NCBI RefSeq assembly: GCF_000143415.4
Contig: NW_003314271.1
Span: 868,001-932,000, forward strand
Direction: 5' to 3'
Length of the DNA: 64,000 nucleotides
DNA from: Selaginella moellendorffii
Taxonomy: Eukaryota > Plantae > Lycopodiophyta
Part shown: piece by piece, positions 1 through 32,600 of the stretch
How positions within the stretch are numbered: position 1 is the stretch's first letter
Layout of the letters: each line of letters starts with the position of its first letter
Notes under the pieces: generated by a model
Databases searched by the model: none
What the model saw: the letters and a program-made list of their open reading frames with translations, nothing else
Told to the model about the DNA's origin: nothing
Translations under genes and position numbers: made by a program

Positions 1-985
1 ATCTGCATATAGAGCTCCAGAGCATCTGGAACCTCACGCAGAGTCACCCTCAATATTATCCTCGGAGCATGGCGATTCAAGTGACGATGTTGAGCAACTC
101 TCCTCAAAGTATTCGATTCTGCCGGAAACTCAGGGGAGTTTCTTTCAATCCGATATTGATCTTAACGACCTCTTAGACCGTCCAGGTATACGAGTCAGAG
201 TGGACATTTTGCTATCTGACACACGGCTCGATTCAAACTATCTGCAGACATGTTCCTCGGCCAGAAGGCGCTCACTCCTGCCGTGAGCTTGGACATGAGC
301 GGATGGAAAGAAGTTCTGCGAAGTTATCGAGAGAATCCAACGAATGGCCCCGTCAAGCCAGAGGACGAGACGTTAGAGCAGCGTACTACCAGGGATGCAT
401 TCCTGGAACAAGCCTCGCCCATAAAGTTTGAGGATGGAATGTTCAAGTTATCACCAAGAGCGAGTCTAAGTCCTAAAGCGATCATGGAAGTCTTATCTCC
501 TCGGGGTCTGGGTCGCCAACCTCAGACACATTTCGAGGCTCAGCTGCGTGCTGCCACCGCTGAGAACGCCATGAAAACAGCACAAAGCCTCTCTCCGGTG
601 TGAATTACATAGTCAGTTCTTTCGTTACATGTAATCTCTAACACGTCCATGCAGACAAAACGTGTTTCCTCTCCTCCGCCTGCGCAAAACGTCCTTGTGG
701 ATATGGGGCGTGCTTCTCAACAGGTATTTAAGTTCCGCTTTCTCTCGCTGGCGAATCGACACGGGGAGCGCACTGGTTAAAAACTCTAAGCTTGTCAAAC
801 AGGAGGGCAGAATCAAGCAACTGGCTAGTTTTGCACGATGGGCGCTCGAGCCCGCGCCCGCGGGCTGGAGCTCAGTTTGCCTCCTTCCAACGAAGAAACC
901 AAGGTTTCGTCTCACGTATATATTTATCTCGCCTCTAGATTCTAAATGGCAGGTTCTCGTCTCCGGGACCGCTGGACGTGGGTAA
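1..985 (+). CDS. Truncated CAMTA-like gene, copy A (5' part outside window; spliced)
   Basis: Exons paralogous to copies C/D: DLNDLLDRP, FLGQKALTPAVSLDMSGWKEVLRSY, IKQLASFARWAL (cf. CAMTA LKKLDSFGRWM). The C-terminus diverges and stops at about 985. Confidence 0.7.
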
Positions 986-1119
986 GTGAGGCACCACGAG
1001 GTCGTTTGATAAACAAACAAGCCTGGCTGCGAGATTGGTGATGTGGGATTGCCAAAGGCGTGTAGCGTTATAATTTAAGAAAATCTAAAACAGTTTAGTT
1101 CAAAGCTTTTGTTCTTCTC

Positions 1120-1545
1120 GCGCAATCCGTAACAGATTCTGTGGCGTGACCTGCCGTCAGAGCGCCCGCGAGTAGATCAAAGCCTGTTTCTACAGTGGAG
1201 GTAATGCTTTCTGTCATGCCGCATTTTCCTGGGGGCGCTGCCAGATTTGATCAGCAATGGCTTGGCTGTGGCGATTGTTGACACTGGAGCGATTTTGATG
1301 CAGGGATTTGTTATGAGGACGCTGTCTCGGCCACGCTTGCATCCAATGTCTATCTCGGTCGGTATACACTTTCTTTCATACCTTGTGAATTTTTATCGAG
1401 ATTTTCTTTGTTAGATTATTACTTGGCCTACTTGTCCCACAGTATCTGATACGTGCTACATTGATATCCTCAAGAACAAGCCTCTGGTTTGTGTAAACGG
1501 ACAATATCTGAGGAGTCAAGTTGAGGGATCTTTGAACTCTGGTAA
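1120..1545 (+). pseudogene. HISN2: HISN2/hisIE (PR-AMP cyclohydrolase/PR-ATP pyrophosphatase) remnant, copy A
   Basis: Fragments read NGLAVAI-VDTGAILMQGF...DAVSATLAS and IIYL..PTC, matching the HisI domain, with deletions and frameshifts. Confidence 0.75.
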
Positions 1546-1897
1546 GTGCACTCTTGTTTTCTCCATTTTGAACTTAAAGCTATGTGTTTCTTGCACAGGG
1601 TCATAGATGTTTTAAACGTCCAAAATGCAAGCATCTAGCACCATGTAGTTCATTCTAGTATGTTATGTAGAATGGAATGCAGGGCTCACAGGGCATATGC
1701 CTTGGGTACAAAAAACCAAGCAAGTGGTGAGAGTTTATAGTGGGGCCGAAATTTCCAGAAATCGACGCTGGGCGAAAGGGCAAAAGTCCTTTTTCTTTGA
1801 TCAAAATATTACCTTTACATGGTCAAACTAAAGTGGTGGAGGCGGCTATTTTTAGCTGTCAAAGAGGCATTGTTTTAGATTGATTTTTGTGTTTGAG

Positions 1898-2400
1898 ATG
1901 GCGATGCCGCAACAAGGTGAGTGGAGGAATTTCAAGATTGAAGACAAGAGATAACAAGGAGATTGAAGACTGGGAGATAACAAGGATCTGAGGCAATCGT
2001 CCAGAAAGCTTGCTCCGATGGCTCAAGCTACCCGAAGTTGGCAAGATACTTCGCAATTATCAGAGCTACCGTTCCTCCCAGCAGGCCCACCAGTGAGTGC
2101 TCCTTTGCTCTCCTTGCTTGTGCCACACTGACTTGCCACGCTACTAGGTGGATCCTTGCTCTTGTTTCATTGCAACGCCTTACAGGTAAAGTTTATGCTT
2201 TCTCTCGCTGGCCTGTGCTCAAGAACTTTAGTGGCAGTACCAATTGGACACGGAGAGCGCACTAGCTAGAAAATCAAGCGACTCGCTAGTTTTGGACGAT
2301 GGGCGCTGGCAGAGATAGGTAGCAACAATACAGATGCGGTCTCGAGCTCCATTTGGGCAGCCATGGACGATTACAAAGAAACCACTTGCACTCATAAAAA
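1898..2400 (+). pseudogene. CAMTA-like copy B, heavily deleted
   Basis: ATG..PQQ|gtgagt exon 1, then RWLKLPEVGKILRNYQSY, then a jump directly to KIKRLASFGRWALAEIG. Most of CG-1 and the middle exons are lost. Confidence 0.8.
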
Positions 2401-2469
2401 TCACGTGAGACAAAAGGGAAAGTGCAAGTCGTCTTTGAGAGCTAGGGCTTTAGTGCTACAATGTAGCAG

Positions 2470-2645
2470 TAATGCGGGAATGACATGCCTGCGATCTCGC
2501 GCAATCCGGGCTCCTCTCGGAACTGTGGAGGTAAGGATTGTAATTCTTTCTGGGATTTTGTAGCGCCTAGGAGATCCATGCGCAAGTTATGAGAAAGAGA
2601 TTTTCTCAGTCAGGCAAAAAGAACAGCCGAGCGTTCAAGTTGAGT
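2470..2645 (+). pseudogene. HISN2: HISN2 remnant, copy B (5' and 3' ends fused by deletion)
   Basis: gcaatccgggctcctctcgg..ctgtggag|gtaag matches the starts of copies A/D; agattttctcagtcaggc (RFSQSG) matches the HISN2 C-terminus. Confidence 0.6.
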
Positions 2646-3051
2646 GATCTTTCAACTCAGCTGGGAAGTGCTCCATATTGAACTTAAAAGTATGTGCTTC
2701 TTTCCCAAAACTTCCAAAATGCTTTGTATGCGTATGCCCAAGGGCATACTTATAAACAAACCGAATAAGTGGGTGGTGGAATATCTAATGGTGGAATATC
2801 AATTTCACATCGGGCCAAAGGTTCTTTTCCTTTGATCCTTGGTTCTTGGGTGATCCTATGCTTTTTAGTTGGGCACCACTTATAGTGGCTGCCTTTACAT
2901 GGTCGAATGTGTGGCGTGCAACATTCAAACTAAAGTGGAAATGCTCCTCAGGGCATCTCTAGTGTCTTGCTATATTTAGCTGTGAAACCGATAACTATGA
3001 ATCAAATATCAAAACTCGCGACTGGCGCTCCCCTGGTTTGATTTTGTGTAG

Positions 3052-4679
3052 ATGGCGACTGTCCGTGGGATGCGGCAGCAAGGTGAGTGGATGCTAATTA
3101 CAAGATCGAAGACTGAGATAACAAGGGTCTGAGGCAAAACAGACTTCGACATGAGGCAGATCATCCAGGAAGCTTGCGTCCGATGGCTGAAACCACCCGA
3201 AGTTTGCAAGATCCTTCGCAATTATCAGAGCTACGGTTTCGATCTCAGCCACGTTCCTCCCAGCAAGCCCGCCAGTGAATGCTCCTTTCTCCTTGCTTCG
3301 ATTGTCACATGGACTGACTTGCCAAAGCTACTAGGTGGATCCTTGCTCTTGTTTGATCGCAAGGCTGTAAAGTACTTTCGGAAGGATGGCCACAACTGGA
3401 GAAAGAAGAAAGGCGGCAAGGCTGTTCGCGAGGCTCACAAGCGGCTCAAGGTTTGCTTGTTATTCCTAGGAACAACGAGGCCACCACTATTGCGGCACTT
3501 GGTTGTATGCAGTTTGGGAGTATTGACGTGCTACATTGTTACTGCACCCATGGAGAGGAAGATCCAAATTTTCAAAGGAGCTACTGGATACTGGAAGGGT
3601 AAAAAAAAAGTGATATGGAAATCTCCTCACGTGTATTATCATGACTTGTAGTGCTTACAAACACATTGTTCTTGTTCACTACCTTCAAGTACAACAGGTC
3701 GGTGTTCTGGTGCTTTTCTTTTTCCAGCTCGAAGCTTTTCCTTTTCCAGGATCTTGAATCGGCATACAAAGCTTTAGAGCATCCGGAAGCTTTCTCGCAC
3801 GCAATGGATTCGCCTCTGTTGAGTTCTGTCGGAACTCAACAAGGTCCAAGCTATCAGCAGGGGAGCTTGTTTCAGCCCGGACAAGATGGTGGTATTCTGG
3901 AAGATTGTATTGATCTTAACGACCTTTTAGACAGTCCAGGTATATGTGTGACTAGTCAGAGTGGACGTTTTGCTTTCTCACACACAGCTCGATTCAAACT
4001 ATCTGCAGACAAGTTCCTCGGCAAGAAGGCCCTCACTCCTGCTGTGAGCTTGGACATGAGCGGATGGAATGAACTTCTGCGAAGCTATCGAGAAAATCCA
4101 ACCACTGGCCCGGTCAAGCAGGAGGATGAAACTTCAGAGCAGTGCACTACGAATGCATTGTTAGGACAAGTCTCGCCCATGAAGTTTGAGGATGGAATGT
4201 TCAAGGAATCACCTGGAGCGAGTCTAACTCCCAAAGCGATCATGGAAGTTCTATCTCCTCGGGGTCTGGGTCGCCAACCTCAGACACATGTCGAGGCTCA
4301 GCTGCATGCTGCCGCGACCAATAATGCCATAAAATCCCTCTCTCCGGTGAGTGAATTAGATAGTCAGTTCTTAATCTCTAACACGTCCATGCAGCGCTGG
4401 CAAGAGACTATTTCCTCTCCTCGGCCTGCGCAAAACGTCCATGAGGATATGGGGTGCGCTTCTCAACAGGTAAAAGTTTATCTTGCTGCTGCGCCTGCCA
4501 CTAAAGTCCTTGAGCACAGGAATTCGACACAGGGAGCGCACTGGTGGAAAAATCAAAGCTTGTCGAATAGCTCGCTGGGCAAAATGAAGCAACTGGACGA
4601 TGAACGACGAAATACAGGTGTGCTACTTGCACGGACGCTGGTCACAAACGTTTTTCAGTGCAGCAAACAGTTGCAATAA
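3052..4679 (+). CDS. Truncated CAMTA-like transcription factor (CG-1 domain, no TIG/ANK/IQ), copy C
   Basis: Spliced CG-1: DMRQIIQEACVRWLKPPEVCKILRNYQ..GSLLLFDRKAVKYFRKDGHNWRKKKGGKAVREAHKRLK..IDVLHCYCTHGEEDPNFQRSYWILE..HIVLVHYLQV. Canonical GT-AG introns. Confidence 0.8.
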
Positions 4680-5339
4680 CAAGCAACGCATAGAGGAATA
4701 GACATCTCCTTATATTAAAAAGGTACTTTTGTAATGAAAGAGTTGCCACTAGACACTCATTTAGCATTGAATTCACATTAATCCATTTTATGGTAAAATG
4801 CCTTAAAATATAAGCATTCTGCCACCAAATGGTTTTTACGTTAGCCACCACTGGATCAAAACAAATGGTTTTTAGGTTAGCCACGAAGTTGAAAAATAAA
4901 GATTAAGGCTATAAACTTTTATTTATGGATCTAGACAGTTTGGTGGATTTATTGCAACGATGGTGGATTTTGCCTAGGGTTACAAAGATTTTTATGATTG
5001 AGGTAAAGAGGGAGCATTTCTACAATTATTTACAACTAAAGATAATATGTTAAATTTTTTAATTGTTCTGATTGTTTTTCTAATATGTATATTTAAATTT
5101 TGATTTTTTATTAAAATTATTATTATTTAAATGTTTTATATTTTATATTTTACAAGGTATATAAAAAGTATATTCTTTTCTTTTAGAATATACAAGGAAT
5201 TTTGATGATGTGGCAGCCTGCCAAACATGAAAAAAAGAGAGGAAATCCTCCAAAATCACCCTAATACTTACCTTTAACATAAATTTATAGTTAACTTCAA
5301 TTTAATATAAGAGTAATACTACTCCTGTACGAATGCTAC

Positions 5340-5670
5340 CTCGTGCAAAGGCCTATCACAATGGAGCTCATACGCTTTTGCTGTTTCTCTTGCTGGAGTT
5401 TGACGTTCACCAGTGTCAAGAGAGGAGAGGAGGGAGAAGAGGATAGATTGTGCTCCACGAGAGAGGAAGAAGGAGAGGGCTGAGCTGTGCAAGACAGTCG
5501 GACAAAACGAAGGCAGGAAAAGGACTGTATCAGAAATGGTCTTGTACCATTCGATGGTACTGCTTGCAGCACAAGATGTGAAGATGGCGGAAGTTATGGA
5601 AGTCTTGAGAGCGAGATTCTCTCAATCAGGCGTTGAGGACGAGAACAGCCGAGGCAGGAATTCAAGTTGA
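5340..5670 (+). pseudogene. HISN2: HISN2 remnant, copy C (HisE C-terminal part)
   Basis: AELCKTVGQNEGRKRTVSEM-VLYHSMVLLAAQDVKMAEVMEVLRARFSQSGVEDENSR matches plant HISN2 (SEMADVLYHAMVLL..VLRKRFSQSG). The AD residues are deleted. Confidence 0.85.
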
Positions 5671-6255
5671 AGGATCTTTCAACTCAAGTGGAGAGTGCTT
5701 TTCCATTTTGTTTTAGAGGGCTGATCCCATATGTGTTTCCCTCACAGGATCGTAGATGGCTTGACCGATGGAAGTATCAAGCACCAACATGTTTTTCATT
5801 CTAGTAGCCTTTACATTTACATGGAACATGTACAAACAGACCGATCAAAGTGGGGAGAAAACCAAGAAAACTGAATTAAGCGAATTGAAATTTTTTATTT
5901 TGGTAGTGGGGTGGAATATGCATTTTCATATATCCATAATCAATCCTTGACGTACCAACGTGTTGGTTCTAAAACAATAATATAGTGGAATGTTACTTTT
6001 AGATGGTGGAATGTCTACTGGTAAAGGTGTTCTTTGCGTCAAATTAAGAACATGAAAGTTGTGCAGAGTTCCTCAGCACTATATTTAGATTGCATATATT
6101 TCTGGATGACCATTTGGTCATCAAATTATTTGCGTCAACTGGCCAATCAAAGCTCGCGGGTGGCAGGGGGCTCTCGTAGTTAGGCGTTCATGGGGGGATG
6201 CCATGGCGGTGGTGTGAAGCTGCTCCCACTGTTTTAGATTAATTTTGTTTTTGAG

Positions 6256-7978
6256 ATGGCAACAGGTGGAAGAGTCTATAAAATGCCGCAGCAAGGTGAG
6301 TGGAGGCTAGTTTCAAGGTCAAACAAAGACTCTGCTATCTGAGCAGACCTCGACATGAGGCAGATCATCCAGGAAGCTTGCGTCCGGTGGCTCAAACCAC
6401 ACGAAGTTTGCGACATACTTCGCAATTATCAGAGCTACGGTTTCGATCTCAACTCCCTTCCTCCCAACCGGCCCGCCAGTGAGTGCTCCTTGCTCCTTGC
6501 CTTGTGTCACACTGACTGGCTTGCCATGCTACTAGGTGGATCCTTGTTCTTGTTTGATCGCAAGGCTGTGAGGTGCTTTCGGAAGGATGGTCACAACTGG
6601 AAGAAAGAAGGCCAGGCTCACGAGAGGCTCAAGGTTTGCTTGCTATAACTAGGAACAACCATCGCGACACTTGGTTCCTGATCTTGTATGCAGTCTGGAA
6701 GCATCGACGTGCTGCATTGTTACTACGCCCGTGGAGAAGAGGATCCAAATTTTCAACGGAGCTACTGGATGCTGGAAGGGTACATAGAGCAGGAAAAAAC
6801 AAACATGCATCCCCCCCTCACTTGTATTATCATGGCTTGTAGTGCTTATGAACACATTGTTCTTGTCCACTACCTTCAAGTACACCAGGTCGGTTGCGGT
6901 GTTTTTCTTTTTCTAGCTTTCTTGTGGCTCGAAGCATTTCTTTTCCAGGGTCGTGAATCTGCTTATGGAGCATCTCCAGAGCATCCGGAACCTTTCTCGC
7001 ACTCGGAGCATGGCGATTCAAGTGACCATGTCGAACAGATGGAGCAACTCTTTTCAAAGGATTCGCTTCTGTCGGAAACTCAGTCCGGGCAAGGTGGTAA
7101 TCTAATGATGGAAGATCGTATTGATCTTAACGACATCTTAGACAGTCCAGGTAAACGAACCAGTCAGAGTGGACGTTTTGCTTTCTGACACACAGCTCGA
7201 ATCAAACTATTCTGCAGACATGTTCCTCGGCCAGAAGCCGCTCAGTCCTGCCGTGAGCTTGGACATGAGCGGATGGAAAGAAGTTCTGCGAAGCTATCGA
7301 GAGAATCCAACGAATGGCCCAGTCAAGCAAGAGGATTCAGATGCTTTAGAGCAGCGTACTACCGTGGATGCATCGCCGGGACAAGTCAAGTTTGACGATG
7401 GAATAATGTTCAAGTTATCACCTGAAGCGATTCCAAGTCCCAAGGCGATCATAGAAGTCCTCTCTCAACCGGGTCTGGGTCGCCAGCCTCACACACTTCT
7501 CGAGGCCCAGCTGCGTGCTGCCACCGCCGAGAACGCCATGAAAACAGCACAAAGCCTCTCTCTGGTGAGTGCAGTTCTTTACATGTAATCTCTAACACGT
7601 CCATGAAGCGCTGGCGGGAAAGTGTTTTCTCTCGCCCGCCTGCGCAGAACGTCCTTGTGGATATGGGGCGCTCTTCTCGACAGGTAAAAGTTTCTCTTTC
7701 TCTCGTGCAGCGCCCTGGATAAAAACTCATTTTCAAAGCTTGTCAAACAGGAAGAGAGCGACATCAAGAGCCTAGCTAGTTTTGGACCATGGGCGCTGGC
7801 AAAATTTGGTAACGACGACGATGCAGGTGCGCTACTCGAGGCCGCGCCCTCGGTCTCGAGCTCCGTTTGGGCAGCCATGGACGTTGACAAGGACAGAGAA
7901 GAAACCTCCAACCTCCCTACGCCAATGGAGCTTGAGATGAGTGCCCAGTTCCAACGCTTCAGCATTACAGACCTTTAA
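6256..7978 (+). CDS. Truncated CAMTA-like transcription factor (CG-1 domain), copy D
   Basis: ATG 6256, exon 1 MATGGRVYKMPQQ, CG-1 exons, IKSLASFGPWALAKFG, and end MSAQFQRFSITDL-TAA (7976-7978), at the position where the CAMTA TIG domain starts (Q.FSI.DFSP). Confidence 0.85.
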
Positions 7979-8087
7979 GAAACCAAGGTTTCATACGTAT
8001 CTCGCTTGTAAAAGGGTGGATTTTGTTTGAAGAAGTGTATATATACATATTGGTTTAACAGAGAGTTAGGGTTTTAGGGCTCGTGGC

Positions 8088-8900
8088 AATGCGGGACGCG
8101 ATCTGGGCTTCTCTCGGAGATTCCTCCGCTTGAGCAGGAGGTTCCGCTAGAGCTCTGGAGGTAAAGATCATAAATACCTAGGAGATCCATGCGAGGTGGA
8201 GGCGCTGCTGGATTTGATAAAATTCGATGGGTGTGATTTTGATGCAGGGATTTGGGACGCTGTCTAGGCCACGAAGCGAGTGACGTAATTTAGTCGAAGT
8301 CGTTGATCTCTTTTTGGACCAAAGGAGAGACGCTATCCAATTTTATTGGTGTTGTGGATGTCTATCTCGACTGTGATGGAGATTCGGTACACACTTTCTT
8401 TTATTCTTTGTGAGCTCTTATCGACTTTATCTTTTTTAGATTATTACTTGGGAAAGCCTGACCGGCCTACTTGTCACACAGGAGCTGGTTGACTTAAGTT
8501 AGTATTATTAACAAGAACTTGAGATCAATCAGTAATTTTTCTCATACGTGCTACATTGATATCCTCCTGGTTTATGTAAACTGACAATATCGTTCTTCTT
8601 CTTCCACTGATATATTTTTTTACAGATTGATGTATTGTCAACTTCTATTTGGAAAGAGTCATTCAACAGCGAGCCTGATGGGGAAAGCCGTCGTGGCTAT
8701 TGCAGACCAGGAGCTGCTCTTAAGGTGTTGTTTGAGCTTTTGTTTGTTTCATGCGTCTGGCTCAGAAGAAACTTTGGCAGGGAGGAAGCTGGTGATCTGT
8801 GCAAGACAGACCGAAGGCAAGGAAATGACTGTATCAGAAATGGGTGACGTCTTGTACCATTCGATACAATGCTTGCAGCACAAGACGCGAAGATGGCAGA
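8088..8900 (+). pseudogene. HISN2: HISN2 pseudogene, copy D (most complete)
   Basis: EVEALLDLIKFD, ILMQGF, FSRSR*SL-WTKGETLSNFIGVVDVYLDCDGDS|intron|YLGKPDRPTCHTGA, REEAGDLCKT, TVSEMGDVLYHS. Contains an in-frame stop and frameshifts. Confidence 0.85.
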
Positions 8901-9167
8901 AGTCGGATCTTTTAACTCAGCTGGTAAGTGCTTTTCCATTCTGTTTAAGAGCTAACTAACAGGGCTAATCCCATGTGTTTCCCTCACAGGGTCGTAGATG
9001 TTGTAAATCCATGGAATGGAAGTGTTGTCTGCAGCAATAATGCCTTAAAAAAATGGTGTGTGAGTTTGATATTGGAAGGTCGACACGTTGTGTGATGCTG
9101 TTTGGCGACTTCCAAAACTTGACCGAAGCAAACTGTACAAGTATCTAGCACCAACAGGTATTTCACT

Positions 9168-19919: not shown

Positions 19920-20054
19920 ACGTATTAAGTTCTTCAAGCCTACGTAACTATACTCGTGAACTCTGGCTACGGAAGTTCATTCTCTAAAAGTTCTTTATAC
20001 AAACTTCGATTGGCTTCGAAGAAGAAAACATCTTTGCTCTTACTAGAAATTTCA

Positions 20055-20306
20055 ATACATATATTGTCAAACTCCAACATGAGCTTGTTTTAATAGTAAA
20101 CTTTACAATCTCTGTTCGGCTATTTAATCAAATCCTTGCTCCAGTTCCAGACTTTCACAGCACCTTGCTTGTCACCCGAGCCAGCAGCACCTTTCTTGTT
20201 GCCCGAGAAGACTAGATTGTTACCGGCAGCCGCAGAGGAAAGGCTGATAACTTCTGCGCTCCAGAACAAGTAGGATGGAAGCCCGTAAACCTTCACTGTT
20301 TAGTCA
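20055..20306 (-). pseudogene. Duplicated 3' end (last ~60 codons plus 3' UTR) of the CCCH-WD40 gene
   Basis: Direct copy of about 21850-22087 (aatcaaatccttgctcca..gactagattgtt..cccgtaaaccttcactgtt) with indels. Confidence 0.85.
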
Positions 20307-21499
20307 ATGAGTGTAGTTACGAAGAACATAACTATTTTGTTGTATATAACTGTTAACTTGCTATTTTTGTTTTTATCACACATACTCAAGAAAAAAGTGA
20401 ATATATCAAATGGATTAATGGCTGTATATTTACTACTTGTAATAAAAATAAAAGTAGTGAGTTAAAAGTAAAATTTTGGAAAACATTCAAACTCTTAAAA
20501 ATAAATTGATTAATGATAGTTTGATGTTTATTGTTTTTGATTATTTTAATATATTTTAGTTTTTAGGAGTTTGAATGTTTTTTGTTTTTTTTTTTTAAAG
20601 TCAAATTCAACTTAAAAATGAACTTTTTGCATTGTTACACAAGTTATGTATATAAGTAAAGAAGGCAATAATAGAATAAAAACTTTAAAGGAAATATAAT
20701 TTATAGTATTCAAGATTTAGATGATAAATCAACGTAAACACTATCATATTATCATTTTTGCCATAAAATAAAACCAAATAGATGTCTAAAGTATGTGCAA
20801 CTATTTTTCCCCTTTACTTTCTATATAGTGTCATAATGTAAATATTTTAATAAAGTAGATTTAATTTTATTAGGATAATTTTATCATTTAATATTTTTAT
20901 TTATATTTAATAAAAAATTTACAAAAATTATATTTATTTGTAGTTATTAACAGAAATAGTTACATTATAAAGTTACTTAAATTTTACTTAAAAAACTTCT
21001 ATATAATTTACATTGCCTTTATAGTTTGTAATATAGTTCTTTAGTTTTTTCCATATCATTTACATCATAATTTCAATTATAGTTCCAACAAAATTACTTG
21101 TTATAGAAGTAACATCAAACCCCTTTAAGTAGTGTGGTTAATTTTAAAATCTAAAATTTGCAAAAAAAAGCTAAAGACATTACAACTTAAATACTATTAA
21201 AAAGGTTAGTTGTCAAGTGTGATGCCACCAGGGAGGTCAGTTGTTGAGAGTGATACTGCTGGGATAATGGATATTTTTGATTCACTTTTAAAGAAAGAAC
21301 AAAACAAAAAGTTATAGTTTGTGATTAAAAAAAAAGTAATATGTTAAAATAAAAACTTAAAAAACATTCACATTTTTAAAAATAAATAAAGTTATGACAT
21401 TTATATTTTATTATTATTTTAATTTGTAAAAACATTTAGGGTATTATATATCTATAAACTTGGAATAATAAAAAAGTTCACATTTATATATAATTTGCT

Positions 21500-21780
21500 C
21501 CACATTGCATGTAGTAATGCTTAGTTTGCTTAATAGTAGTGTTATTCATATTTATTAATTTAATTAATTTAATTAATTTAATGGAAATTTAAATACTTTT
21601 CTAATGGTTGATATTCAATAAGCTTAATTTTGTGTTTATAAATTATAAATATGTTTATACATTATAAGTACAAAATTAATCTAAATAAATATTCTAGAAT
21701 ATTCAAATATATTTTAAGTATATTCACTACCCTTGAATCATATGAAAATAATTTAACTGAGTAAAACAATAAAAACTAAT
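21500..21780. repeat. AT-rich dispersed repeat, also at about 28170-28470
   Basis: Shared blocks ttgcatgtag..tt(a/g)gtttgcttaatagtagtg, ttaatctaaata and agtatattcactacc in the same order. Confidence 0.6.
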
Positions 21781-21913
21781 TTACATATTGCTTGAACTTA
21801 AAACAGCCACTTGGTTTAAATAGACAAAAAACCATCTTTACTCTTAATACATATTTTGTCAAACGCTCCAATGCACGCTTGTTTGCCTAGTAAACTTTAC
21901 AATCGCTGGTGAG

Positions 21914-23475
21914 CTACTTAATCAAATCCTTGCTCCACTTCCAGACTTTCACAGCGCCTTGCTTGTCGCCCGAGAAGACTAGATTGTTGCCAGCAGCCGC
22001 AGAGGAAAGGCTGATGACTTCCGCGCTTGAGAACAAGGCGCCTCTTTCCTCGAACGATGGTAGCCCGTAAACCTTCACTGTTGAGTCGCGGTACGAGCAA
22101 ACGAGCACGGGCTTGCCATCGCTATCGACGCTCCCACACATCCCTGTTACTCCGCTTCGTCCCACAATCTCCTCCTCTCCTTCCGGAAACGTGAAGTAGT
22201 TCTCCAAAGTTCCAGCCGGAGTCGCGGCCCACACCTTGATGAAGCTATCGAGCGAGCAAGACAGGAGGAAGGACTCCCAACACAGCAGGCCCGTTAGCTC
22301 GCCAGCGTGAGCCTTGACGATGGTTGCACAGCTCTTCCCAGTCTCGGCCTCGCAAACTCTGATGGATCCGTCCCTGGAGCCCGAGTAGACGCGACCTCCA
22401 GCCACAGTGAGTGCCGTGACAGCGCTGGGATGTTTGCTCAACGTCCCTGTAGATTTGAGCTCTCCACTGCCAAACTCCCACGCGCAAACTTCTCCCGAGC
22501 CAAGCCCCGCCACCAGCAAGCCTTTGCCAACTGCTAGAGCGTTCACGTTTCCCGGTGCTCGAGCTTGTAGTGTCTGCTGCGAGAACTTGACGTTCCAGGC
22601 CAGGACTTCGTGGCCAGCACCGGCGAAAATCCAGCCAAAACCACTGGCCAGTGCCTCCACCGGGCCCTCTAGCCTCAGAGTATCTGACACGGTCCCCGAG
22701 TTGCAATCCCAGGCCCTGAGAGTTCCATCGGTAGCACCAGTAAAGAGCACTGCCGAGTCTGGAACCATAGCTATTCCCGTGATGCTCTCCTTGTGCTCTT
22801 TGAGCGTGGTGAGGAGCGCCAATCCGGTGACGGTGGTAGCAGCGTGGAGGAACTTACACCTCTCCCCATATCTACACGACCCCTCCAGCCAATACGCACA
22901 AGCCCTTTGGGTGTGAGGAGAAGGCGAAGTTCCTGGTTTCCTTGCCGGCTTCTTTGATCCCAATATCAGTGCCTCTGTCGACGAAGATCTCTTGAGCTTT
23001 GGAGGCGGTGGAAGAGCTGCTGGATCGACGATGATCTTCTGTGCATTGTTTTCCGAGTGTTAGCGACCATATGCCTAGCTGTGAAAACCTTTTGCGCAAC
23101 ACACACTACCTTGCTCTTGATGATCTCGGGCCCCTTCGTTTGATCAAACCCAATGACCCTCGCCTTGTCTGCCAGACCCTCTTTGATCCATGTGTTCTTC
23201 TTCAACACGGGGCGGCTGCCGCTGGCGCTGCTACTGGGATCCGCGGCGGCGACACTCCGCTTCCTGCTAGGCCTCTCCAGCGGGAGAGGAGCACTCTCCC
23301 CGGAATCAGCTTCACCGTGCACGAATCCACAGCCAGCACCCTTGCTACATCGCCCCTGTTGCCAGAATTTACATACCCTGGGGATCTGGCCGGTGAAATC
23401 GAGGCGATCGCTCATGGGTCGCCTGGAAATCGCCCTCTTCGTTGCCTCTGGATGAAGAACCTCGCTCAGCGCCAT
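21914..23475 (-). CDS. Zinc-finger CCCH + WD40 protein (ZFWD-like), one intron at about 23110-23039
   Basis: Two CCCH fingers (CKFWQQGRCSKGAGCGFVH; CAYWLEGSCRYGERCKFLH) and a WD40 propeller. A GT..AG intron joins the two ORFs in frame (..IIKSK|KIIVDP..LILGSKKP). Confidence 0.9.
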
Positions 23476-25579: not shown

Positions 25580-26013
25580 ATTTTTTTCATAAAGTATGTC
25601 ATGTATGCATGGGTGTAGCACATGTGATCATGGGATGAGATTTGGATATATTATCACTGTGAATCTTTAGAACCTTGGGGGATAAATGGGGATAAAATAG
25701 CCATTAAAGGCTCTTTCATCAAGCAATTACCCCTTTTCCAATTCGCTTAAAGGGAAATAAATAAGATGTGCTGGAATGGGTATGACACTTTAAATTGCTA
25801 TGTATCATGCCATGTCATTTCAAACAATATAACATCACTACAATCTAACAATTGGAAAATGGGCAATTATTTGATGAGAGAGCCCTTAATGGCTATTTTA
25901 TCCCCATTTATCCCCCAAGGTTATAAAGATTTACGGTGATAATATATCCAAATCTCATCCCATGATCACACGCGCTACCCCCATGCATACATGACATACT
26001 TTATGAAAAAAAT
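25580..26013. repeat. Foldback inverted repeat (about 164-bp arms, 105-bp loop), MITE-like
   Basis: 25580-25743 is the near reverse complement of 25850-26013. Confidence 0.9.
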
Positions 26014-28879
26014 CACAATAACATAAATCTAGCAAGGGTATTTATGTTTTATTCCACTTATTACAACTTATTTGTAATGTAGTGCCTTAATTATGATTGA
26101 TTGGAATGCCATCAATTAGAGTGTGGTGGCAAGCGCAATTGATTGGAGAGCAATAAGTGTGATTGATTGGAATATGGTAGCAAACTTGATCAATTGAATC
26201 ACAGTAGCAAAACATTTCTACTTTTATATATATGTTTTATATAGTGCCATAAAAAAATATTATTTTCTTTGAGTATTTAGAGTGTTAAGCATGGTGGTTT
26301 TTTGCAAACAAATAGATTTTGTTATACCTAGGGCTTTTCTCTTGCTAAAAAATTGTGCTACAATAAAACATTAGTTTTATCAATTTTTAACATTTTTAAT
26401 CATATACTAAAGTTTTTAGCATTACAATAGTTTGTTGCGCTTGGGCTTTTATGCAAAGCACTTTTCATTACCTTCACAAAAAAATAAACCCACTAATAGC
26501 AAGATTAACCCATAACATTCAAAATGTAGACATCCAAAGGTACTAAAAATTTAGTTTTTGCATTAGAAAATGTTATGCCTAGAAGTTTTAAATTTAAACC
26601 TATAAGCTCCCAAATTTAAACTTTTTAAAAAGTTCACCCAACTCAATATTACTTAAACCAAAGACACTTAACCCCAAGTATCCTAAAACTCTTAATTGAT
26701 TGAAAAAGGGAGTTTTACTCTTTTGACACTTTATTCTTTAAATCGAGTTTAGCTAGAAGCAAATTAAACCTTCTAAATGTCAATTTTAACATGTAGTAGG
26801 ATGCCCCACAACTTTTTTGATAATAAATATTGAGTCTTTCTATCATGAATATCTCCACTAATTCCTAGTTTCTATGTTACTTCATATTGTGGAAATCTTT
26901 TTCATTTCACATGGAACTCTTTCACCTTATGTTATTATTACTTGCCTTTAAAGCTTCCATCTCATAAAGCTTTATGAACCTACTTAAAAAACTCAAATCA
27001 CTTTAGCCACACCTTCCACATCCACTTTTATTGTAGTAGTGGATATGTAATGTTAAATCCTAAATAATAAATTTGGACTTTCTGGGAGGTCACACAATCT
27101 AATGCTACTCAAACCCAAAAACATTTAACCTCAAATATCTCAAAAACCTTAATTGATTGAAAAAAAAAGTGCACTTTTATTCATGGGTTCGTTCCTTTTA
27201 GATTTAAATTATTATGTACTGTCTCTTAAGTAATTGTCTTTAGTTGTTTACAAAATCTTATTGACGTGTCAAAAAATCTAATATAAAGTTGAAATTTATT
27301 CACAAAAAAAATAAATTATATATATGATGCTGATTTGGACTTTGCCATACATATGTGGTGACCACCAATGTATGCCTATCATAGGGTGGAAACTCTTTTT
27401 TAGGGTTAGGATAAATATACATACATTGTAAGGGTGTGAATACCTAGGGTTTTGTATGGATAAATTTTAGGTACATGCAAAGGTATAGAGAGGGATTTTA
27501 TTTTAGAATAGGGTAGATTTAAATAGCAATAGTGTTTGGATTAGTGTGGCTTATTATATCTAAGAAACAAGGTTAGGAGCTTGTAAAAGTTCACAATTGG
27601 GGAGGTATTCAAAGTATAAAAAATAGTAATAGGGTGTTTGAATCTTAATATATATATATACACATGCACACACCTTTAAGTTTTGTTAGTTTTAATGCCA
27701 TAGGTAGATATATAAGGGCTAAAATTGATTTATTTTTTGGATATACTTGGGGTTTTATGAATTTTTTTGAACACAACCATATCCAGAGATTTGTTCTAGG
27801 TGGCCACCCTAGGGTGGCTATGCATAAATAAAAAGTTGTGCTCAAAATATTATATTATAAGTCACAAATGTGTATTACAACAATTTAAGCACACTTGCCA
27901 AGCCACCCACCCTAGGTACGCTTCCTTAGGAGGTGTACCCCCCCCAAATTGCTATCATAAATTGCTTGCTATATACTATAGTATGATAATAAATAAATAC
28001 TAAAATATTCTAAAAACTAAAAAATAAAAATCACACAATTAGTTAGCATTCTCATACAATACAGCTTTTATTTAATTTAATTTCTTCCATGTTTTTAAAA
28101 TAACCTTAACTATAAAATTTTAAATTTAAAAATAAATTTAGTTACTAAAAATTATAATTAATAATTTTACATATATTGCATGTAGCAACACTTGGTTTGC
28201 TTAATAGTAGTGCTTATTATTTATTTATTTAATTGATCAATTGAAAAATTGTAACTATAAACTTGTTTATAATTTATAAATACAAAATTAATCCTATTGC
28301 ATTCAACCATTAGATGATAGAATAAACTAGAATATACCAGAAAGTGTTTAGAAACCTTATAAATTATAAATAAAAAGATTAATCTAAATATATAACAACT
28401 GCTAGATGGTAAAATAATCCCAGAATATCCAGGTATATTATGAGTATATTCACTACCTGCTTAAGCAAACCCAAAATAAAAAATAAAAATAAAAACTGTT
28501 TCATAAATATGAAGAAATGCAACACTAAAAATACTATATATATATATATACACTGTAAGTAATTTTCCTAAAACCTTTTAAAACTAAAGCACATACTTTT
28601 GTGATTTAATTTTTTTCATTAGTTGTGATTTTTCAAATATCCTTATACTTCAAAATATAATAGAAGAAAATAAAAGTATAAAATAATAATACATGCTGAG
28701 CTTTCATTTTCTTATTCAAGGCAGCTAGTAGTCTTGGATATGGTTGTTTTTTTGAATAAAGTGAAAAAATATTTAAATAGTAAAACATACATGAGCTTCT
28801 TTTTTTAGTTTAGTATTTTTTATTTAAAGTAATGTCGTTAGAATCTTAAAAAAATATCTGACCACCTTTACATATAATT

Positions 28880-29385
28880 TAAACCTCTAGACCAAGTATT
28901 ACATACACCACCATACTCAAGCTTCATGCCTCAAAGTTTCACTTGATCTCAACATGTGCCACAACATGCCAAAAGTCATGTCCACATGACATAAATCTGC
29001 AAAAAAGAAATTTTCCACCATAATAATCTTGCTAACTTTCACTAATAAGTCATGCACCACACCATCTTATTGTTGGTTCTTAGTGGCAGTTTTGACAATT
29101 TTATCTCAGCAAAGTTGGTTGAGGAGTATAACCTGCCAGTGACTAAAGTGATTCCTTATGGAATTTTTGGAGCTGTCACCAAGAACTAATAGTGGGATGG
29201 TGACTTATTAGTGAAAGTTGGCAAGATCACCATGGTGGAAGATTTCTTTCTTGCAGATTTATGTCATGTGGACATGATCTTTGGCATGTCATGGCACATG
29301 CATGTTGATCTCAACATCAAGTGGAGCCTTCAACACGTGAAACTTAAGTATGGTGGCATCACATAATATTTAGTTTAGGGTGTAA
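28880..29385. repeat. Inverted repeat built from a Ty3/gypsy aspartic protease remnant
   Basis: 28880-29052 mirrors 29200-29385. The + strand reads LSGSFDNFISAKLVEEYNLP..VEDFFLADLCHVDMIFGMSW, a retropepsin-like pattern with the catalytic Asp lost. Confidence 0.75.
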
Positions 29386-29602
29386 AGATAGGATCCTAAC
29401 ATTGGTGAGAAAATATTCATAAACTTACTAATCTTCTTATAAGTTTTGCCTAAAGAGGTAGCTTTTTGACAAAATCAAGTATTAAGTTGCATCCAGGTAC
29501 TATATAAAATCCTCTTTATGCATCAAATTAATTTGCTATTAGTATGAACTCTCTTTTGAGTCTTCTGGCTTCATTGTGTCCCCTAAGCTAACATTGTTTT
29601 TC

Positions 29603-32600
29603 CATAGTTCTTGACAAATGCATTTTTTTTAGGAATTTAGCATTTGTAAACGCTCGTTTGTGTTCACATTTGTTGCGTATTTGTGTTTGTTACTATAATT
29701 TTTTTAACTAAGTTAAAGAATATTCTTTTGTTTTACCCTTTCTCTATTCTTGGGCTGAGCAACGATGTTGGAGAGAGCAGACAAGCTGTGGAAAATGAAT
29801 GGGGTAAGGACACCATCCTTGGCAAAACATATAATAATGTTCAGCATCACTAGATTTATAAGCATTGCAACAAAGAGTATAGAGGGTTTTGAAGCGTCGC
29901 CGGGCATATTTGGGGCAAATCCTAAGTCACCAAATTGCTTTGTGTGAGGCTATGCCGAGTTGCAATTGCTCCACATCACTGAGTTCTGCTCAAATTATCT
30001 TTTGGATAAGTCTTCCAAAAGACTTCTTAGTTCTTATGCTCGGCTACCCAAATGCCAAAAAGGGAACTACCTACTACAAGATCAAATGCCCAAATGTTGC
30101 ATAGGGACATAGAGAGTAGAGGCAATGGAGAATCTATGAGGCAATCCTCTTAGGGAAGCTCTATGTACTCAATTGGAAGTGCAACTTTTGATGGCCATTT
30201 GCCTACAAACATACAGTTTATTGCAAATGTCAAGTTGGGGCATTTAGGAAGCAAAACTCAAATGACTCTCAAATAGTTCTTTGAAAATCAATATCACCAA
30301 AATGCAAACATGACTATGAGGAGGTTCATCTATGCTCATGCTCTTCCTTTTAACATAATCTGTTCACCTTTTTGGGAAGACATAGTGGATGCTTTACTTC
30401 TTGTTAGAAAGGGATACAAATCCACTATAATCAAATATAAAGGACTTTGTGTTTAGCATTTGAATGAAGAATGTCAAAGTCTGAGGGAGAGGATGCAATT
30501 AATCAGAGAAGGATGGAAACATTATGGTTATAATATTATCTTGTATGGATGGCAATGCAGTAGGAAGAGGTTGATTATCAACTTATTGGCTGTGAGTTGT
30601 CAAGGTTGTGTTTCTTAAAATCAATTGATGCATTAGATGCAATCAAGAGTGGTTTATATCTCTATGAGCAGGTAGTGATTCTGGAAGTTGTACTTGAGAA
30701 TGTTGCCCAATTGGTCACAAATAATGCAGCCAATTGCGTAAGTATGGGCCAACTTATGATGGAGGAATTCCCTCATATATCATACATGTTTGTTGTGTTT
30801 GCCATGTTCTTGATTTGTTATGCAAAGATATTAGCAAATTTGAATGGGCACAACTATTGATTAGTGGATGTGAAAAGCTGGTTACCTTCTTTACGAAGAA
30901 ACCAAGTTTCCCACTTGAGTTAGTTGAGAAATTGGTCAATGACCGTGTACTTAGATCGGATAAACATAAGGTAGGAACCCTATGTGTTTCTTGCTGAGCA
31001 TACTCAACTTGGTTTGAGAAACTCCTGTCATTGGCTTGCACTTGCTAGTATCAAGAACTCCCGCGATATTGAGATTGGTCCCTTAATATCGCTAGATGAT
31101 AGCTTACCGTGTCTGCCAAACACCCTCGCTATCATACCCTTTGTGTTAGTCTCATTTTGGTCCCAAATGTTATTTATGGAAAGTGTCCAGATTTGCTCAT
31201 TTGGCATATCTACGGAATGTAGAGATCGTCCTGAACACAATGGTGTTCGTCCCGTGTCCAAATTCGCAATCTAAGGACATTCCATATTTAGTAAGTTTCA
31301 AGCTTGTCCCAGAGACTAACTCCTGATACTAAGGGAGGCTTGGGGTGAAAGCCCAAAGCGTGTGTTCCTCTAGGGGGGGGGGATGTGGGGGGTTCCAAAT
31401 GCATAGTAGGGATAGTGGGTAGGTCGGGCATGGCCGACCAACCTGAGGCATAGTCTAGCTCCCGCTTGCGTGCTTGTCCTTGTTCTGCGTCCGGCTTGGG
31501 TCTAAGCCCAAGTTCCATTCCATGCTAGTTGGTGGAGTACCCATGTCCTCGCGTTAGGCCACCGGTATGCCGAAATAGCGCCAGACTTCGTTTGGCTCCG
31601 TTTTGCGTGCTGGTCCTGGCATTAGGATGCTGGTTGCTCCAGGACTGTTCCAAGTCGCTCCGGGCTCCTGTCCCTTCGCTCCTTGGGCTTTATGCTCGAG
31701 AGTTGCTCCGTGGTTTAGTTCCGTCACTCCTTGGCTCCATGCTTGGGAGTTTGGCACCGTTCCTTTGTTCAGTGGCCCAAGGCCCTGAACCTCGGGTTCC
31801 TATGGACACGTGGCATGGACACGTGGCATGTGACACGTGGCATCTGTCACGTGGCACAAAGAGGGTTTAGGTTCCGCTTCGTGGTGTTATCCTATGGTAA
31901 ATCACTATAGGATAAAGGGTCAAAACCACGTGCGCTACATACATGGTTGTTGTGTTTGCCATGTTCTTGATTTGTTATGCAAAGATATTAGCAAATTTGA
32001 ATGGGCACAACTATTGATTAGTGGATGTGAAAAGCTGGTTACCTTCTTTACGAAGAAACCAAAGCTTCTAGCTACTTTCCGAAAGATTGCACCATGGGAT
32101 ATTGTAAAGCTAACAACAACACAATTTGCTTATAGCTACTTGGTTATAAGCCAATTCGTTGATGAGAAAATGCTATGGAAGAACAATGAGTTTTGGATAC
32201 AATGTTCTGAGCTTCTCATGATCATGGCCCTAATTCTAAAGCTATTAAAAATAGCTGATAAAGATGGTGTAAGGATGGGCATCATCTTTGAAGCTATTGA
32301 TCAAATGCAAGAGCAGAAATTGGCTGATGATGATGTGGTGGACAAGTAGAGAATTGAAACATTTAAATCATTCATATACAACAATGATCAATCTGATCCA
32401 AACCATTGGCTCATGATGCACAATCTTCTACAAAGTATTGGCTGTTGTTTACATCTTTTGTGAATGGACATAGAAGAGGATGTTGATACCCATGCATACT
32501 TTGAAGAGATTTCAAAGGGGGATTTGAAGGTTGAGGAAAAGTTAATGCTTTAATTTCATGATTTCAAGAAAAATTGACCTACAGAGATGAGACGTAATCT

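What the first reader, a model, noticed from the sequence alone, without database searches (positions are those of the whole stretch)
1..7978. Tandem array of CAMTA paralogues cut before the TIG/ankyrin/IQ-calmodulin module
Seen: four copies. Copy D is spliced, open, and stops at QFQRFSITDL*, exactly where the CAMTA TIG domain begins; C and A end even earlier with different tails. Known: CAMTAs are CG-1 (binds CGCG/CGTG), activation region, TIG, ANK, then IQ/CaMBD. Inference: these are Ca2+/calmodulin-independent CG-1 factors that could be constitutive regulators or dominant-negative competitors of full-length CAMTA, i.e. a lineage-specific module that decouples CAMTA targets from calcium.
Basis: partly seen in the sequence, partly recalled or inferred. 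Interest (0 to 1): 0.75.

Follow-up and report, generated by a model that had tools for sequence, protein, structure and literature searches.

The report
Tandem truncated CAMTA genes in Selaginella
A spikemoss (Selaginella moellendorffii) carries a tandem array of four copies of a calcium-regulated transcription factor gene. All four keep the DNA-binding head but lack the calmodulin-binding half, and three have stayed protein-coding under selection, so they may regulate genes without calcium input.

Summary
The window is Selaginella moellendorffii, and positions 1-7978 hold four tandem CAMTA-derived units.

- **Copy A:** its 5' end is cut by the window edge.
- **Copy B:** a dead relic with a large internal deletion.
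- **Copy C:** exons 1-8 are intact, but the tail is lost.
- **Copy D (6256-7978):** 9 exons, 421 codons, open. It ends ...FSITDL*, opposite residues 440-444 of the 982-aa full-length SmCAMTA, whose Pfam TIG match starts at 442.

No TIG, ANK or IQ coding sequence was found anywhere in the 64 kb window.

A, C and D are not simple wrecks:
- all GT..AG splice sites are kept;
- all 9 (C-D) and 7 (A-D) indels in exons 1-8 are multiples of three, against 5 of 19 in introns;
- CG-1 dN/dS is 0.32 (p = 2e-4) at dS about 0.34;
- a neutral sequence would keep the D reading frame open in at most 2.5% of simulations.

Constraint is nevertheless relaxed. Each copy departs at 5-6 of 38 near-invariant CG-1 positions. 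D has lost six residues of the basic loop, and A and C carry Y>C in the critical YY pair.

The genes are already in GenBank/RefSeq, where NCBI fuses A, B and C into one 917-aa model. I found no paper that discusses them. Calmodulin-independent function is plausible, given the engineered CAMTA3-334 precedent, but it is untested and expression was not checked.

The parts
1..185 (+). Copy A, 3' part of exon 6. The CG-1 exons 1-5 lie upstream of the window; their protein is seen in NCBI model P0153.
   Evidence: Alignment to D exon 6. P0153 residues 1-376 give the whole copy A protein, with CG-1 and the basic loop intact.
248..597 (+). Copy A exon 7
   Evidence: AG/GT boundaries. It is the same sequence as in P0004 and P0153.
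655..723 (+). Copy A exon 8 (69 nt, 6 nt shorter than in C and D, in frame)
791..903 (+). Copy A exon 9. It keeps the IKQLASFARWA motif. Deletions removed the FSITDL-stop stretch, so the frame runs to the ancestral donor AAG|GT at 903|904. The NCBI models add a small exon starting at 953.
1898..2379 (+). Copy B, a relic. It has exon 1, a shortened exon 2 and the start of exon 3, fused by a large deletion to the exon 8/9 region. No CG-1 reading frame is left.
3052..4469 (+). Copy C exons 1-8: 3052-3082, 3143-3274, 3335-3450, 3513-3598, 3652-3697, 3750-3939, 4009-4346, 4395-4469. The frame is open (338 codons) and CG-1 keeps the basic loop.
   Evidence: Splice sites and lengths; no stop codon; Pfam CG-1 at 89 bits on the ORF piece
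4559..4701 (+). Copy C degraded exon 9. The ancestral acceptor gives LVE-stop (4559-4570). The NCBI model uses a later acceptor (4618-4701, a 27-aa novel tail).
6256..7978 (+). Copy D, the complete gene. Exons: 6256-6295, 6347-6478, 6536-6633, 6694-6779, 6843-6888, 6949-7150, 7218-7564, 7609-7683, and 7739 (or 7751) to 7978. It encodes 421 aa, with TAA at 7976-7978.
   Evidence: GenBank models P0002 (this haplotype) and P0003 (the other haplotype) are.
6600..6615 (+). Site of the 18-nt in-frame deletion in D exon 3. It removes six residues of the basic R-K-K-K-D-G-K-x-V-R-E loop of CG-1. The deletion is also present in the other haplotype.
   Evidence: An AF2 model of copy A places this segment in a low-confidence loop before strand 87-94.
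7979..7989 (+). Sequence after the D stop that still matches the parental exon end (E-T-K, then donor AAG|GT at 7987|7988). Copy A has the same stretch at 894-905.
   Evidence: Canonical CAMTAs read ...SPDW....EETKV here.
8235..9000 (+). Spacer after D. It shares segments with the spacers after A (1291-1660), B (2584-2702) and C (5481-5806), so the duplicated unit is gene plus spacer.

Best explanation
This is an old tandem family of CAMTA-derived genes in Selaginella moellendorffii. [quoted passage not shown]

**Origin (inferred from sequence).** A single ancestral copy was truncated inside the first TIG-coding exon. Copies A and D still share the parental exon end (E-T-K) and its donor site beyond D's stop. 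The unit of gene plus spacer was then amplified at least four times. After that, A, C and D stayed protein-coding under weak to moderate purifying selection, their 3' tails diverged through frameshifting deletions, and B decayed.

**Mechanism (inferred, not shown).** Copies A and C most likely act as calmodulin-independent CG-1 factors at CGCG/CGTG boxes. They would resemble the engineered Arabidopsis CAMTA3-334 'N-terminal repression module', acting either as regulators in their own right or as competitors of the two full-length CAMTAs. D has lost most of the basic loop (the predicted NLS and DNA-contact segment). It is more likely weakened or changed in DNA binding or nuclear import.
For: - **Domain content:** CG-1 only. 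No TIG, ANK or IQ match in 64 kb by tblastn at E <= 10.
- **End point:** D is colinear with P0012 residues 13-444, and the TIG match starts at 442.
- **One ancestral truncated unit:** A and D share post-stop sequence, and each unit carries a related spacer. The copies form one clade with 100/99 support.
- **Splice sites:** every GT..AG is kept in C and D, and in the part of A inside the window.
- **Indels:** in exons 1-8, 9 of 9 (C-D) and 7 of 7 (A-D) are multiples of three, against 5 of 19 in introns.
- **dN/dS:** CG-1 exons give dS 0.34, dN 0.11, ratio 0.32, Fisher p 1.7e-4. Exons 6-8 give 0.54-0.72, with p 0.002-0.01 for two of the three pairs.
- **Frame survival:** a neutral sequence keeps D's frame open in 0.07-2.5% of simulations.
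- **Haplotypes:** both keep the D reading frame and its stop. Allelic protein divergence of D is 1.8%, like the full-length genes at 1.5-1.8%.
- **Critical residues:** the DNA-binding residues W26, W75, H88, W118 and Y132 of PMC10417383 are present in all three copies.
- **Middle-region motifs:** motifs shared with Riccia and Diphasiastrum CAMTAs are retained.
- **Precedent:** CAMTA3-334 is functional without the IQ and CaMB domains (PMC9826522).
Against: - No expression data could be consulted. The word searches found no assembled-read (Logan) relative of these proteins and no relative in another species.
- Each copy departs at 5-6 of 38 CG-1 columns that are at least 90% conserved, where canonical CAMTAs have a median of 0. 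A has FRKDG>FQKDG, YY>YC and VHY>VQY. C has AHE>AHK and YY>YC. D has the 6-residue loop deletion.
- dN/dS of 0.3-0.7 is far above what a canonical CG-1 domain is expected to tolerate (my expectation, not measured here). It could reflect past constraint followed by recent decay.
- The tails of A and C are degraded, and B is dead.
- The 3' part of copy A differs from its allele at 3.8% of residues.
- The upstream regions of B, C and D share only about 35 nt before the ATG.
Confidence: 0.6

Rival explanations
1. A decaying pseudogene array. A 5' gene fragment was duplicated in tandem and was constrained for a time, or merely survived by luck. All copies are now non-functional, and the open frame of D is a leftover.
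For: - B is clearly dead, and the tails of C and A are broken by non-3n indels.
- Every copy has independent hits at near-invariant CG-1 positions, including the 18-nt deletion in D and Y>C in A and C.
- dN/dS is 0.54-0.72 outside CG-1.
- No relative from assembled reads was found.
- CAMTA family surveys did not list these genes.
Against: - Exonic indels in exons 1-8 are 3n only, while intron indels are mostly not.
- CG-1 dN/dS is significantly below 1.
- Neutral survival of the open frame is 0.07-2.5% for D alone, and C and A are open as well.
- All splice sites are kept.
- D's allelic protein divergence is no higher than that of the full-length genes.
Confidence: 0.25
2. One long gene, as in the NCBI model. 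Copies A, B and C would be exons of a single 917-aa read-through protein with several CG-1 domains, with D a separate gene.
For: RefSeq model P0153 (917 aa, same scaffold) joins A, B and C through small bridging exons. It has sister isoforms (P0005, X2), which may reflect transcript evidence.
Against: - The bridging pieces come from the relic copy B and from spacer sequence, read in frames unrelated to CAMTA.
- The model keeps intron 2 of copy C as coding sequence.
- A separate NCBI gene (P0004) ends copy A at its own stop.
- Each unit has its own ATG and a conserved stretch of about 35 nt before it.
Confidence: 0.07
3. Decoy or bait copies. These would be rapidly diversifying truncated copies of a host target, kept as decoys for pathogen effectors or as partners of immune receptors, rather than as transcription factors. 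In Arabidopsis, CAMTA3 is guarded by NLR immune receptors.
For: The array is tandem, the tails are variable, the dN/dS is raised and DNA-binding positions are relaxed. CAMTA3 as a guardee of DSC1/DSC2 is cited in PMC10417383.
Against: There is no direct evidence. No NLR gene lies next to the array among the neighbours checked. No sign of positive selection was tested or seen.
Confidence: 0.05

Closest known systems
Full-length S. moellendorffii CAMTAs: CAMTA-a (P0012/P0156, 982 aa, SELMODRAFT_413101/441667) and CAMTA-b (P0033/P0232, 963/966 aa, XP_024514944.1)
   Same: The truncated copies share the CG-1 domain, the G-A-Y-E-H-I-V-L-V-H-Y stretch, the D-x-x-D-L-L-x-x-P-D-x-x-L-G motif, the K-x-L-D-S-F-G-R-W motif and the F-S-I-x-D start of TIG. 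They are colinear with these genes up to residue 444 of P0012.
   Different: - The copies lack TIG, ANK, IQ and CaMB.
- They form a separate, strongly supported clade on a long stem (0.68 changes per column).
- Grouping with CAMTA-a is disfavoured (AU p 0.044), while grouping with CAMTA-b is not rejected.
- Their CG-1 domain is much less conserved.
Engineered Arabidopsis CAMTA3-334 / 'N-terminal repression module' (Kim et al. 2017, as cited in PMC9826522 and PMC10417383)
   Same: It is CG-1 plus the region before TIG, with no IQ or CaMB. It binds target promoters, represses SA-pathway genes and induces cold genes independently of calmodulin binding.
   Different: It is a laboratory truncation of a canonical CG-1 domain. 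The Selaginella copies are natural, old and tandemly amplified, and they carry changes at conserved CG-1 positions. Their activity is untested.
Conserved CG-1-only proteins of about 232 aa in monocots (Musa, Zingiber, Curcuma, Carex, Iris, Phalaenopsis, Dendrobium; P0164, P0166, P0177, P0179, P0163, P0168, P0189, P0161)
   Same: These are natural short proteins with a CG-1 domain and no TIG, ANK or IQ.
   Different: They have a canonical CG-1 domain and end much earlier. They share their own C-terminal tail (...D-T-T-L-S-L-R-C-G-S-M-M...), which is unrelated to the Selaginella tails. They may be splice isoforms, and their origin is independent.
Algal CAMTA-like proteins (Ostreococcus, Coccomyxa) described in PMC4770041
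   Same: They are CG-1 proteins without IQ or CaMB, so they are presumably calmodulin-independent.
   Different: They keep TIG and ANK, and they represent an ancestral state rather than a secondary truncation.

Membership tests
CAMTA (as defined in PMC4770041: CG-1, ANK, IQ and CaMB, with or without TIG) | CG-1 DNA-binding domain (PF03859) | tested here: met
   Pfam scores: D 116-130 bits (P0002/P0003); the A+B+C model 289 bits over three stretches; the C ORF piece 89 bits. The cut-off is 23.5.
CAMTA (as defined in PMC4770041: CG-1, ANK, IQ and CaMB, with or without TIG) | TIG/IPT domain | tested here: not met
   No Pfam TIG match in P0002, P0003 or P0153. D stops opposite residue 444 of P0012, and the TIG match covers 442-517. 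There is no tblastn match in the window.
CAMTA (as defined in PMC4770041: CG-1, ANK, IQ and CaMB, with or without TIG) | Ankyrin repeats | tested here: not met
   No Pfam Ank match. There is no tblastn match to P0012 or P0006 beyond the N-terminal half anywhere in the 64 kb.
CAMTA (as defined in PMC4770041: CG-1, ANK, IQ and CaMB, with or without TIG) | IQ motifs and the calmodulin-binding domain | tested here: not met
   No Pfam IQ match. The proteins end before the part of P0012 that carries these motifs. A cryptic calmodulin-binding helix in the new tails cannot be excluded by sequence alone.
Functional CG-1 DNA-binding domain | The residues shown to be needed for DNA binding in AtCAMTA3 (W26, W75, H88, Y102/Y103, W118, Y132; PMC10417383), plus the conserved basic loop | tested here: inconclusive
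   W26, W75, H88, W118 and Y132 are present in A, C and D. The second Y of the YY pair is C in both A and C. D keeps YY but lacks six residues between W75 and H88. No solved CG-1 structure exists to judge the effect, and the AF2 model is only moderate, with mean pLDDT 65.
Unprocessed (duplicated) pseudogene | Frameshifts, premature stops or lost splice sites within the conserved coding exons | tested here: not met
   For A, C and D in exons 1-8 there are no stops, only 3n indels, and all GT..AG sites are kept. The feature is met for copy B and for exon 9 of C and A.
CAMTA3-334-like N-terminal module (CG-1 + activation region) | A transcription-activating or repressing region between CG-1 and TIG | not testable with these tools
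   A conserved acidic I-D-L-N-D-L-L-D motif and other middle-region motifs are retained. Activity needs a reporter assay.

The most novel reading that the evidence does not exclude
S. moellendorffii maintains, under selection, a small family of natural 'CG-1 + activation region only' CAMTA paralogues. These would bind CAMTA target boxes without any calmodulin input, so part of the CAMTA regulon is set by a calcium-blind competitor or regulator. That would be a natural counterpart of the engineered CAMTA3-334 module, and the diverged tails and the loop-deleted copy D may provide different strengths or localisation.
Probability: 0.3. Interest if true: 0.6.

Novelty: new variant of a known kind. 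Interest (0 to 1): 0.42.

Why it matters
CAMTAs are the textbook link between calcium/calmodulin signals and transcription in plants. Work in Arabidopsis shows that an artificial N-terminal fragment already carries most of the activity, which leaves the role of the calmodulin-binding half open.

A naturally truncated and selectively maintained family would offer an evolutionary experiment on that question, and it sits in a lycophyte with only two full-length CAMTAs.

The result also corrects two records. Family surveys that require all domains overlook such genes and count only one CAMTA in this species. The current RefSeq model fuses three copies into one 917-aa protein.

Tried and rejected
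I could not fetch the DNA upstream of the window (copy A exons 1-5), the other haplotype's array, or the genomic DNA of the full-length CAMTAs.
- **The joined D model was not searched or folded.** My own spliced 421-aa model of D was used only inside scripts that read the window file. All searches and the fold used single ORFs by reference, or the databases' own models (P0002-P0005).
- **One hypothesis dropped.** I briefly considered that the array is the only remnant of a second lycophyte CAMTA lineage. One search showed a second full-length S. moellendorffii CAMTA (P0033), so I abandoned this.
- **Tree placement unresolved.** The CG-1-only tree of 71 rows could not place the clade. The longer alignment also leaves it in a polytomy.
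- **No solved structure.** The PDB sequence search for a CG-1 structure found nothing.
- **Literature.** Searches for the locus tags and for natural CG-1-only CAMTAs found nothing.
- **Relatives of exons 7-9.** The word searches found only the two haplotypes, with no assembled-read contigs and no other species. This is not evidence of absence.
- **Earlier scan notes.** These had nothing relevant.


Full report
**Source and context**

A word search with the long open frame of copy C returned three Selaginella moellendorffii proteins.
- P0002 (SELMODRAFT_440305, 422 aa, on a 3.09-Mb scaffold) is the GenBank model of copy D in this window.
- P0003 (SELMODRAFT_411325, 383 aa, on a 2.76-Mb scaffold) is its counterpart on the other assembled haplotype.
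- P0001 is the counterpart of the 3' half of copy A.

The rest of the window holds ordinary plant genes: glyoxal oxidase, PPR, a WD40/CCCH protein, PORR, a receptor-like kinase, PLATZ and an ABC transporter.

Pfam finds CG-1 (PF03859) on the ORF pieces of C and D and on the database models. Self-comparison shows four tandem units:
- A: 1 to about 985, with its 5' end outside the window
- B: 1898-2379
- C: 3052 to about 4701
- D: 6256-7978

A, C and D are 77-79% identical at the DNA level. Each unit is followed by a spacer that shares segments with the others (1291-1660, 2584-2702, 5481-5806, 8235-9000).

Reading the sequence and anchoring the boundaries gives nine exons for D, with GT..AG at every intron. 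The frame is an open 421 codons ending ...FSITDL, with TAA at 7976-7978.

Against the full-length S. moellendorffii CAMTA P0012 (982 aa; CG-1, TIG 442-517, ANK, IQ), D aligns colinearly to residues 13-444. FSIVD occupies 440-444.

tblastn with two full-length CAMTAs finds nothing beyond the N-terminal half anywhere in the 64 kb, even at E <= 10. Splicing into nearby TIG/ANK/IQ exons is therefore excluded for at least 56 kb downstream.

**The other copies**

The representative search and the cluster look-up brought in the RefSeq models from the same scaffold.
- P0153 (917 aa) reads through A, B and C as one protein. Because of this it reveals the whole copy A protein, including the CG-1 exons that lie upstream of the window.
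- P0005 is an intron-retaining isoform of copy A.
- P0004 is a separate NCBI gene covering A exons 7-9.

State of each copy:
- **A:** CG-1 has an intact basic loop, and the K-x-L-x-S-F-x-R-W motif is kept. Deletions of 39 nt and of about 20 nt (the latter judged by eye) removed the FSITDL-stop stretch. The frame now runs to the parental donor AAG|GT at 903|904.
- **C:** exons 1-8 are intact (338 codons, no stop). Exon 9 is wrecked by deletions. The ancestral acceptor gives LVE-stop, and the NCBI model uses a later acceptor with a novel 27-aa tail.
- **B:** only exon 1, a shortened exon 2 and the start of exon 3 remain, fused to the exon 8/9 region.

**How the truncation arose**

Just after D's stop the sequence still reads E-T-K followed by a good donor site (7979-7989). 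Copy A has the same stretch. Canonical CAMTAs read F-S-I-x-D-F-S-P-x-W ... E-E-T-K-V at this point.

The ancestral unit therefore included the first TIG-coding exon and part of the next intron. The stop arose inside that exon together with an internal deletion, and this happened before the array was amplified. This is an inference from sequence.

**Gene or pseudogene?**

Several independent signals say that A, C and D were held as coding sequence for most of their history.
1. All splice sites are conserved.
2. In a codon-blind DNA alignment, every indel in exons 1-8 is a multiple of three. The counts are 9 of 9 for C-D and 7 of 7 for A-D. Only 5 of 19 intron indels are. Exon 9, where the tails differ, does carry non-3n indels.
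3. Nei-Gojobori estimates:

| Region and pair | dS | dN | dN/dS | Fisher p |
|---|---|---|---|---|
| CG-1 exons 1-5, C vs D | 0.34 | 0.11 | 0.32 | 1.7e-4 |
| Exons 6-8, C vs D | 0.389 | 0.278 | 0.72 | 0.11 |
| Exons 6-8, A vs D | 0.279 | 0.153 | 0.55 | 0.01 |
| Exons 6-8, A vs C | 0.439 | 0.235 | 0.54 | 0.002 |

   Intron divergence (roughly 0.25 overall) is similar to the uncorrected synonymous divergence.
4. With 8-17% neutral substitutions per site, D's 421-codon frame stays open in only 0.07-2.5% of simulations, and C's frame in 0.1-3.8%.
5. The other haplotype keeps D's frame, its loop deletion and its stop. D's allelic protein divergence (1.8%) equals that of the two full-length CAMTAs (1.5% and 1.8%). 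The 3' part of A is higher at 3.8%, from only 7 differences.

**Constraint is relaxed**

At the 38 CG-1 columns that are at least 90% conserved among 66 full-length CAMTAs, the copies depart at 6 (A), 6 (C) and 5 (D) positions. Canonical proteins have a median of 0, and both the Selaginella and Diphasiastrum full-length proteins score 0.

The residues shown by mutagenesis to be needed for DNA binding in AtCAMTA3 are W26, W75, H88, YY102/103, W118 and Y132 (PMC10417383). I mapped them by their spacing in P0012.
- All are present, except that the second Y of the YY pair is C in both A and C.
- D keeps YY but lacks six residues of the nearly invariant basic loop between W75 and H88.

No CG-1 structure is in the PDB. 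An AF2 model of copy A's CG-1 (mean pLDDT 65) puts the deleted segment in a low-confidence loop before a strand. The deletion probably spares the fold, but it removes a conserved basic surface. From the CAMTA literature as I recall it, that surface is the predicted nuclear-localisation and DNA-contact segment. No tool result here supports that point.

**Where the copies come from**

S. moellendorffii has two full-length CAMTAs, not one as counted in PMC4770041.
- CAMTA-a is P0012/P0156.
- CAMTA-b is P0033/P0232. The first genome annotation split it into two partial models.

On 279 columns the truncated copies form one clade (100/99) on a long stem of 0.68 changes per column, placed in a polytomy of land-plant CAMTA lineages.
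- Forcing them together with CAMTA-a costs 14.7 log-likelihood units (AU p 0.044).
- Forcing them together with CAMTA-b, with or without Diphasiastrum 19G, is not rejected and is slightly better than the free tree.

They share H-Y-L and a two-residue stretch after N-Y-Q with the b-type proteins. They also keep a middle-region motif (S-P-K-x-I-M-x-x-L-S-P-R-x-L-G-R ... E-A-x-L-R-A) found in Riccia and Diphasiastrum 19G but lost from both Selaginella full-length proteins.

The family is therefore old, and it is not a recent partial copy of either present-day full-length gene.

**Comparison with what is known**

- By the definition used in family surveys (CG-1, ANK, IQ and CaMB), these proteins are not CAMTAs. 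They are CAMTA-derived CG-1 proteins.
- Functionally, the closest thing is the engineered CAMTA3-334 module. It binds promoters, represses SA-pathway genes, induces cold genes and rescues camta2 camta3 mutants without the calmodulin-binding domains (PMC9826522; PMC10417383).
- Natural CG-1-only proteins also exist elsewhere. The word search shows many short annotated CG-1 proteins. They include a family of about 232 aa, with its own conserved C-terminal tail, across several monocot orders.
- I found no paper on the monocot family or on the Selaginella loci.

**Limits**

- Expression was not tested.
- The word searches found no assembled-read or other-species relatives of exons 7-9. Given the length windows and the content of the databases, this is not evidence of absence.
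- My own spliced model of D was never submitted to a search or folding tool. Searches used single ORFs by reference and the databases' own models. The joined sequence was used only in scripts that read the window file.

**Verdict**

The interpretation (calmodulin-independent CG-1 factors) is reasonable and has an experimental precedent, but it remains an inference.

The data favour genes under weak selection, at about 0.6. A decaying pseudogene array gets about 0.25, and the NCBI read-through model and a decoy role get less.

This is a new variant of a known kind. The sequences are already in public databases but are mis-annotated and not discussed in any paper I found. It is of moderate interest to CAMTA and calcium-signalling specialists.

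Noticed in passing
not in the window: proteins P0033/P0232 (other scaffolds of the same genome): S. moellendorffii has a second full-length CAMTA (963/966 aa, XP_024514944.1). The first genome annotation split it into SELMODRAFT_160122 and SELMODRAFT_77935, so the published count of one CAMTA in this species (PMC4770041) is too low.
   Followed up: partly
window 1-4701 (NCBI model P0153): The RefSeq model 'calmodulin-binding transcription activator 3 isoform X1' (917 aa) fuses copies A, B and C through bridging exons taken from the relic copy and from spacer sequence. It also keeps intron 2 of copy C as coding. It looks like a read-through artefact, or at best a rare transcript.
   Followed up: partly
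proteins P0164, P0166, P0177, P0179, P0163, P0168, P0189, P0161 (monocots): A conserved CG-1-only protein of about 232 aa, with a shared C-terminal tail (...K-Q-V-P-D-T-T-L-S-L-R-C-G-S-M-M...), occurs in Musa, Zingiber, Curcuma, Carex, Iris, Phalaenopsis and Dendrobium. I found no paper about it. It may be a conserved short isoform or a separate gene.
   Followed up: partly
window 48838-49155 and 54414-54688: Two arrays of imperfect tandem repeats with 12/23/34/46-nt periods (unit about GAGATGGACCCGAGATGGAGTCC). They lie inside a region of roughly 6 kb with strong G-over-C and A-over-T skew (50-56 kb). A 114-nt, 2.1-copy repeat sits at 48188-48426.
   Followed up: partly
window 20001-22000 and 26001-30000: AT-rich islands (GC 26-30%) lie between gene-dense stretches of 45-57% GC. 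Their content was not examined.
   Followed up: no
protein P0173 (assembled-read contig, unknown plant): This CAMTA transcript runs into non-homologous sequence right after ...S-Q-E-T-K-V-L-F. That fits an intron at the E-T-K position, the same place where the ancestral donor lies after the stop of copy D.
   Followed up: no
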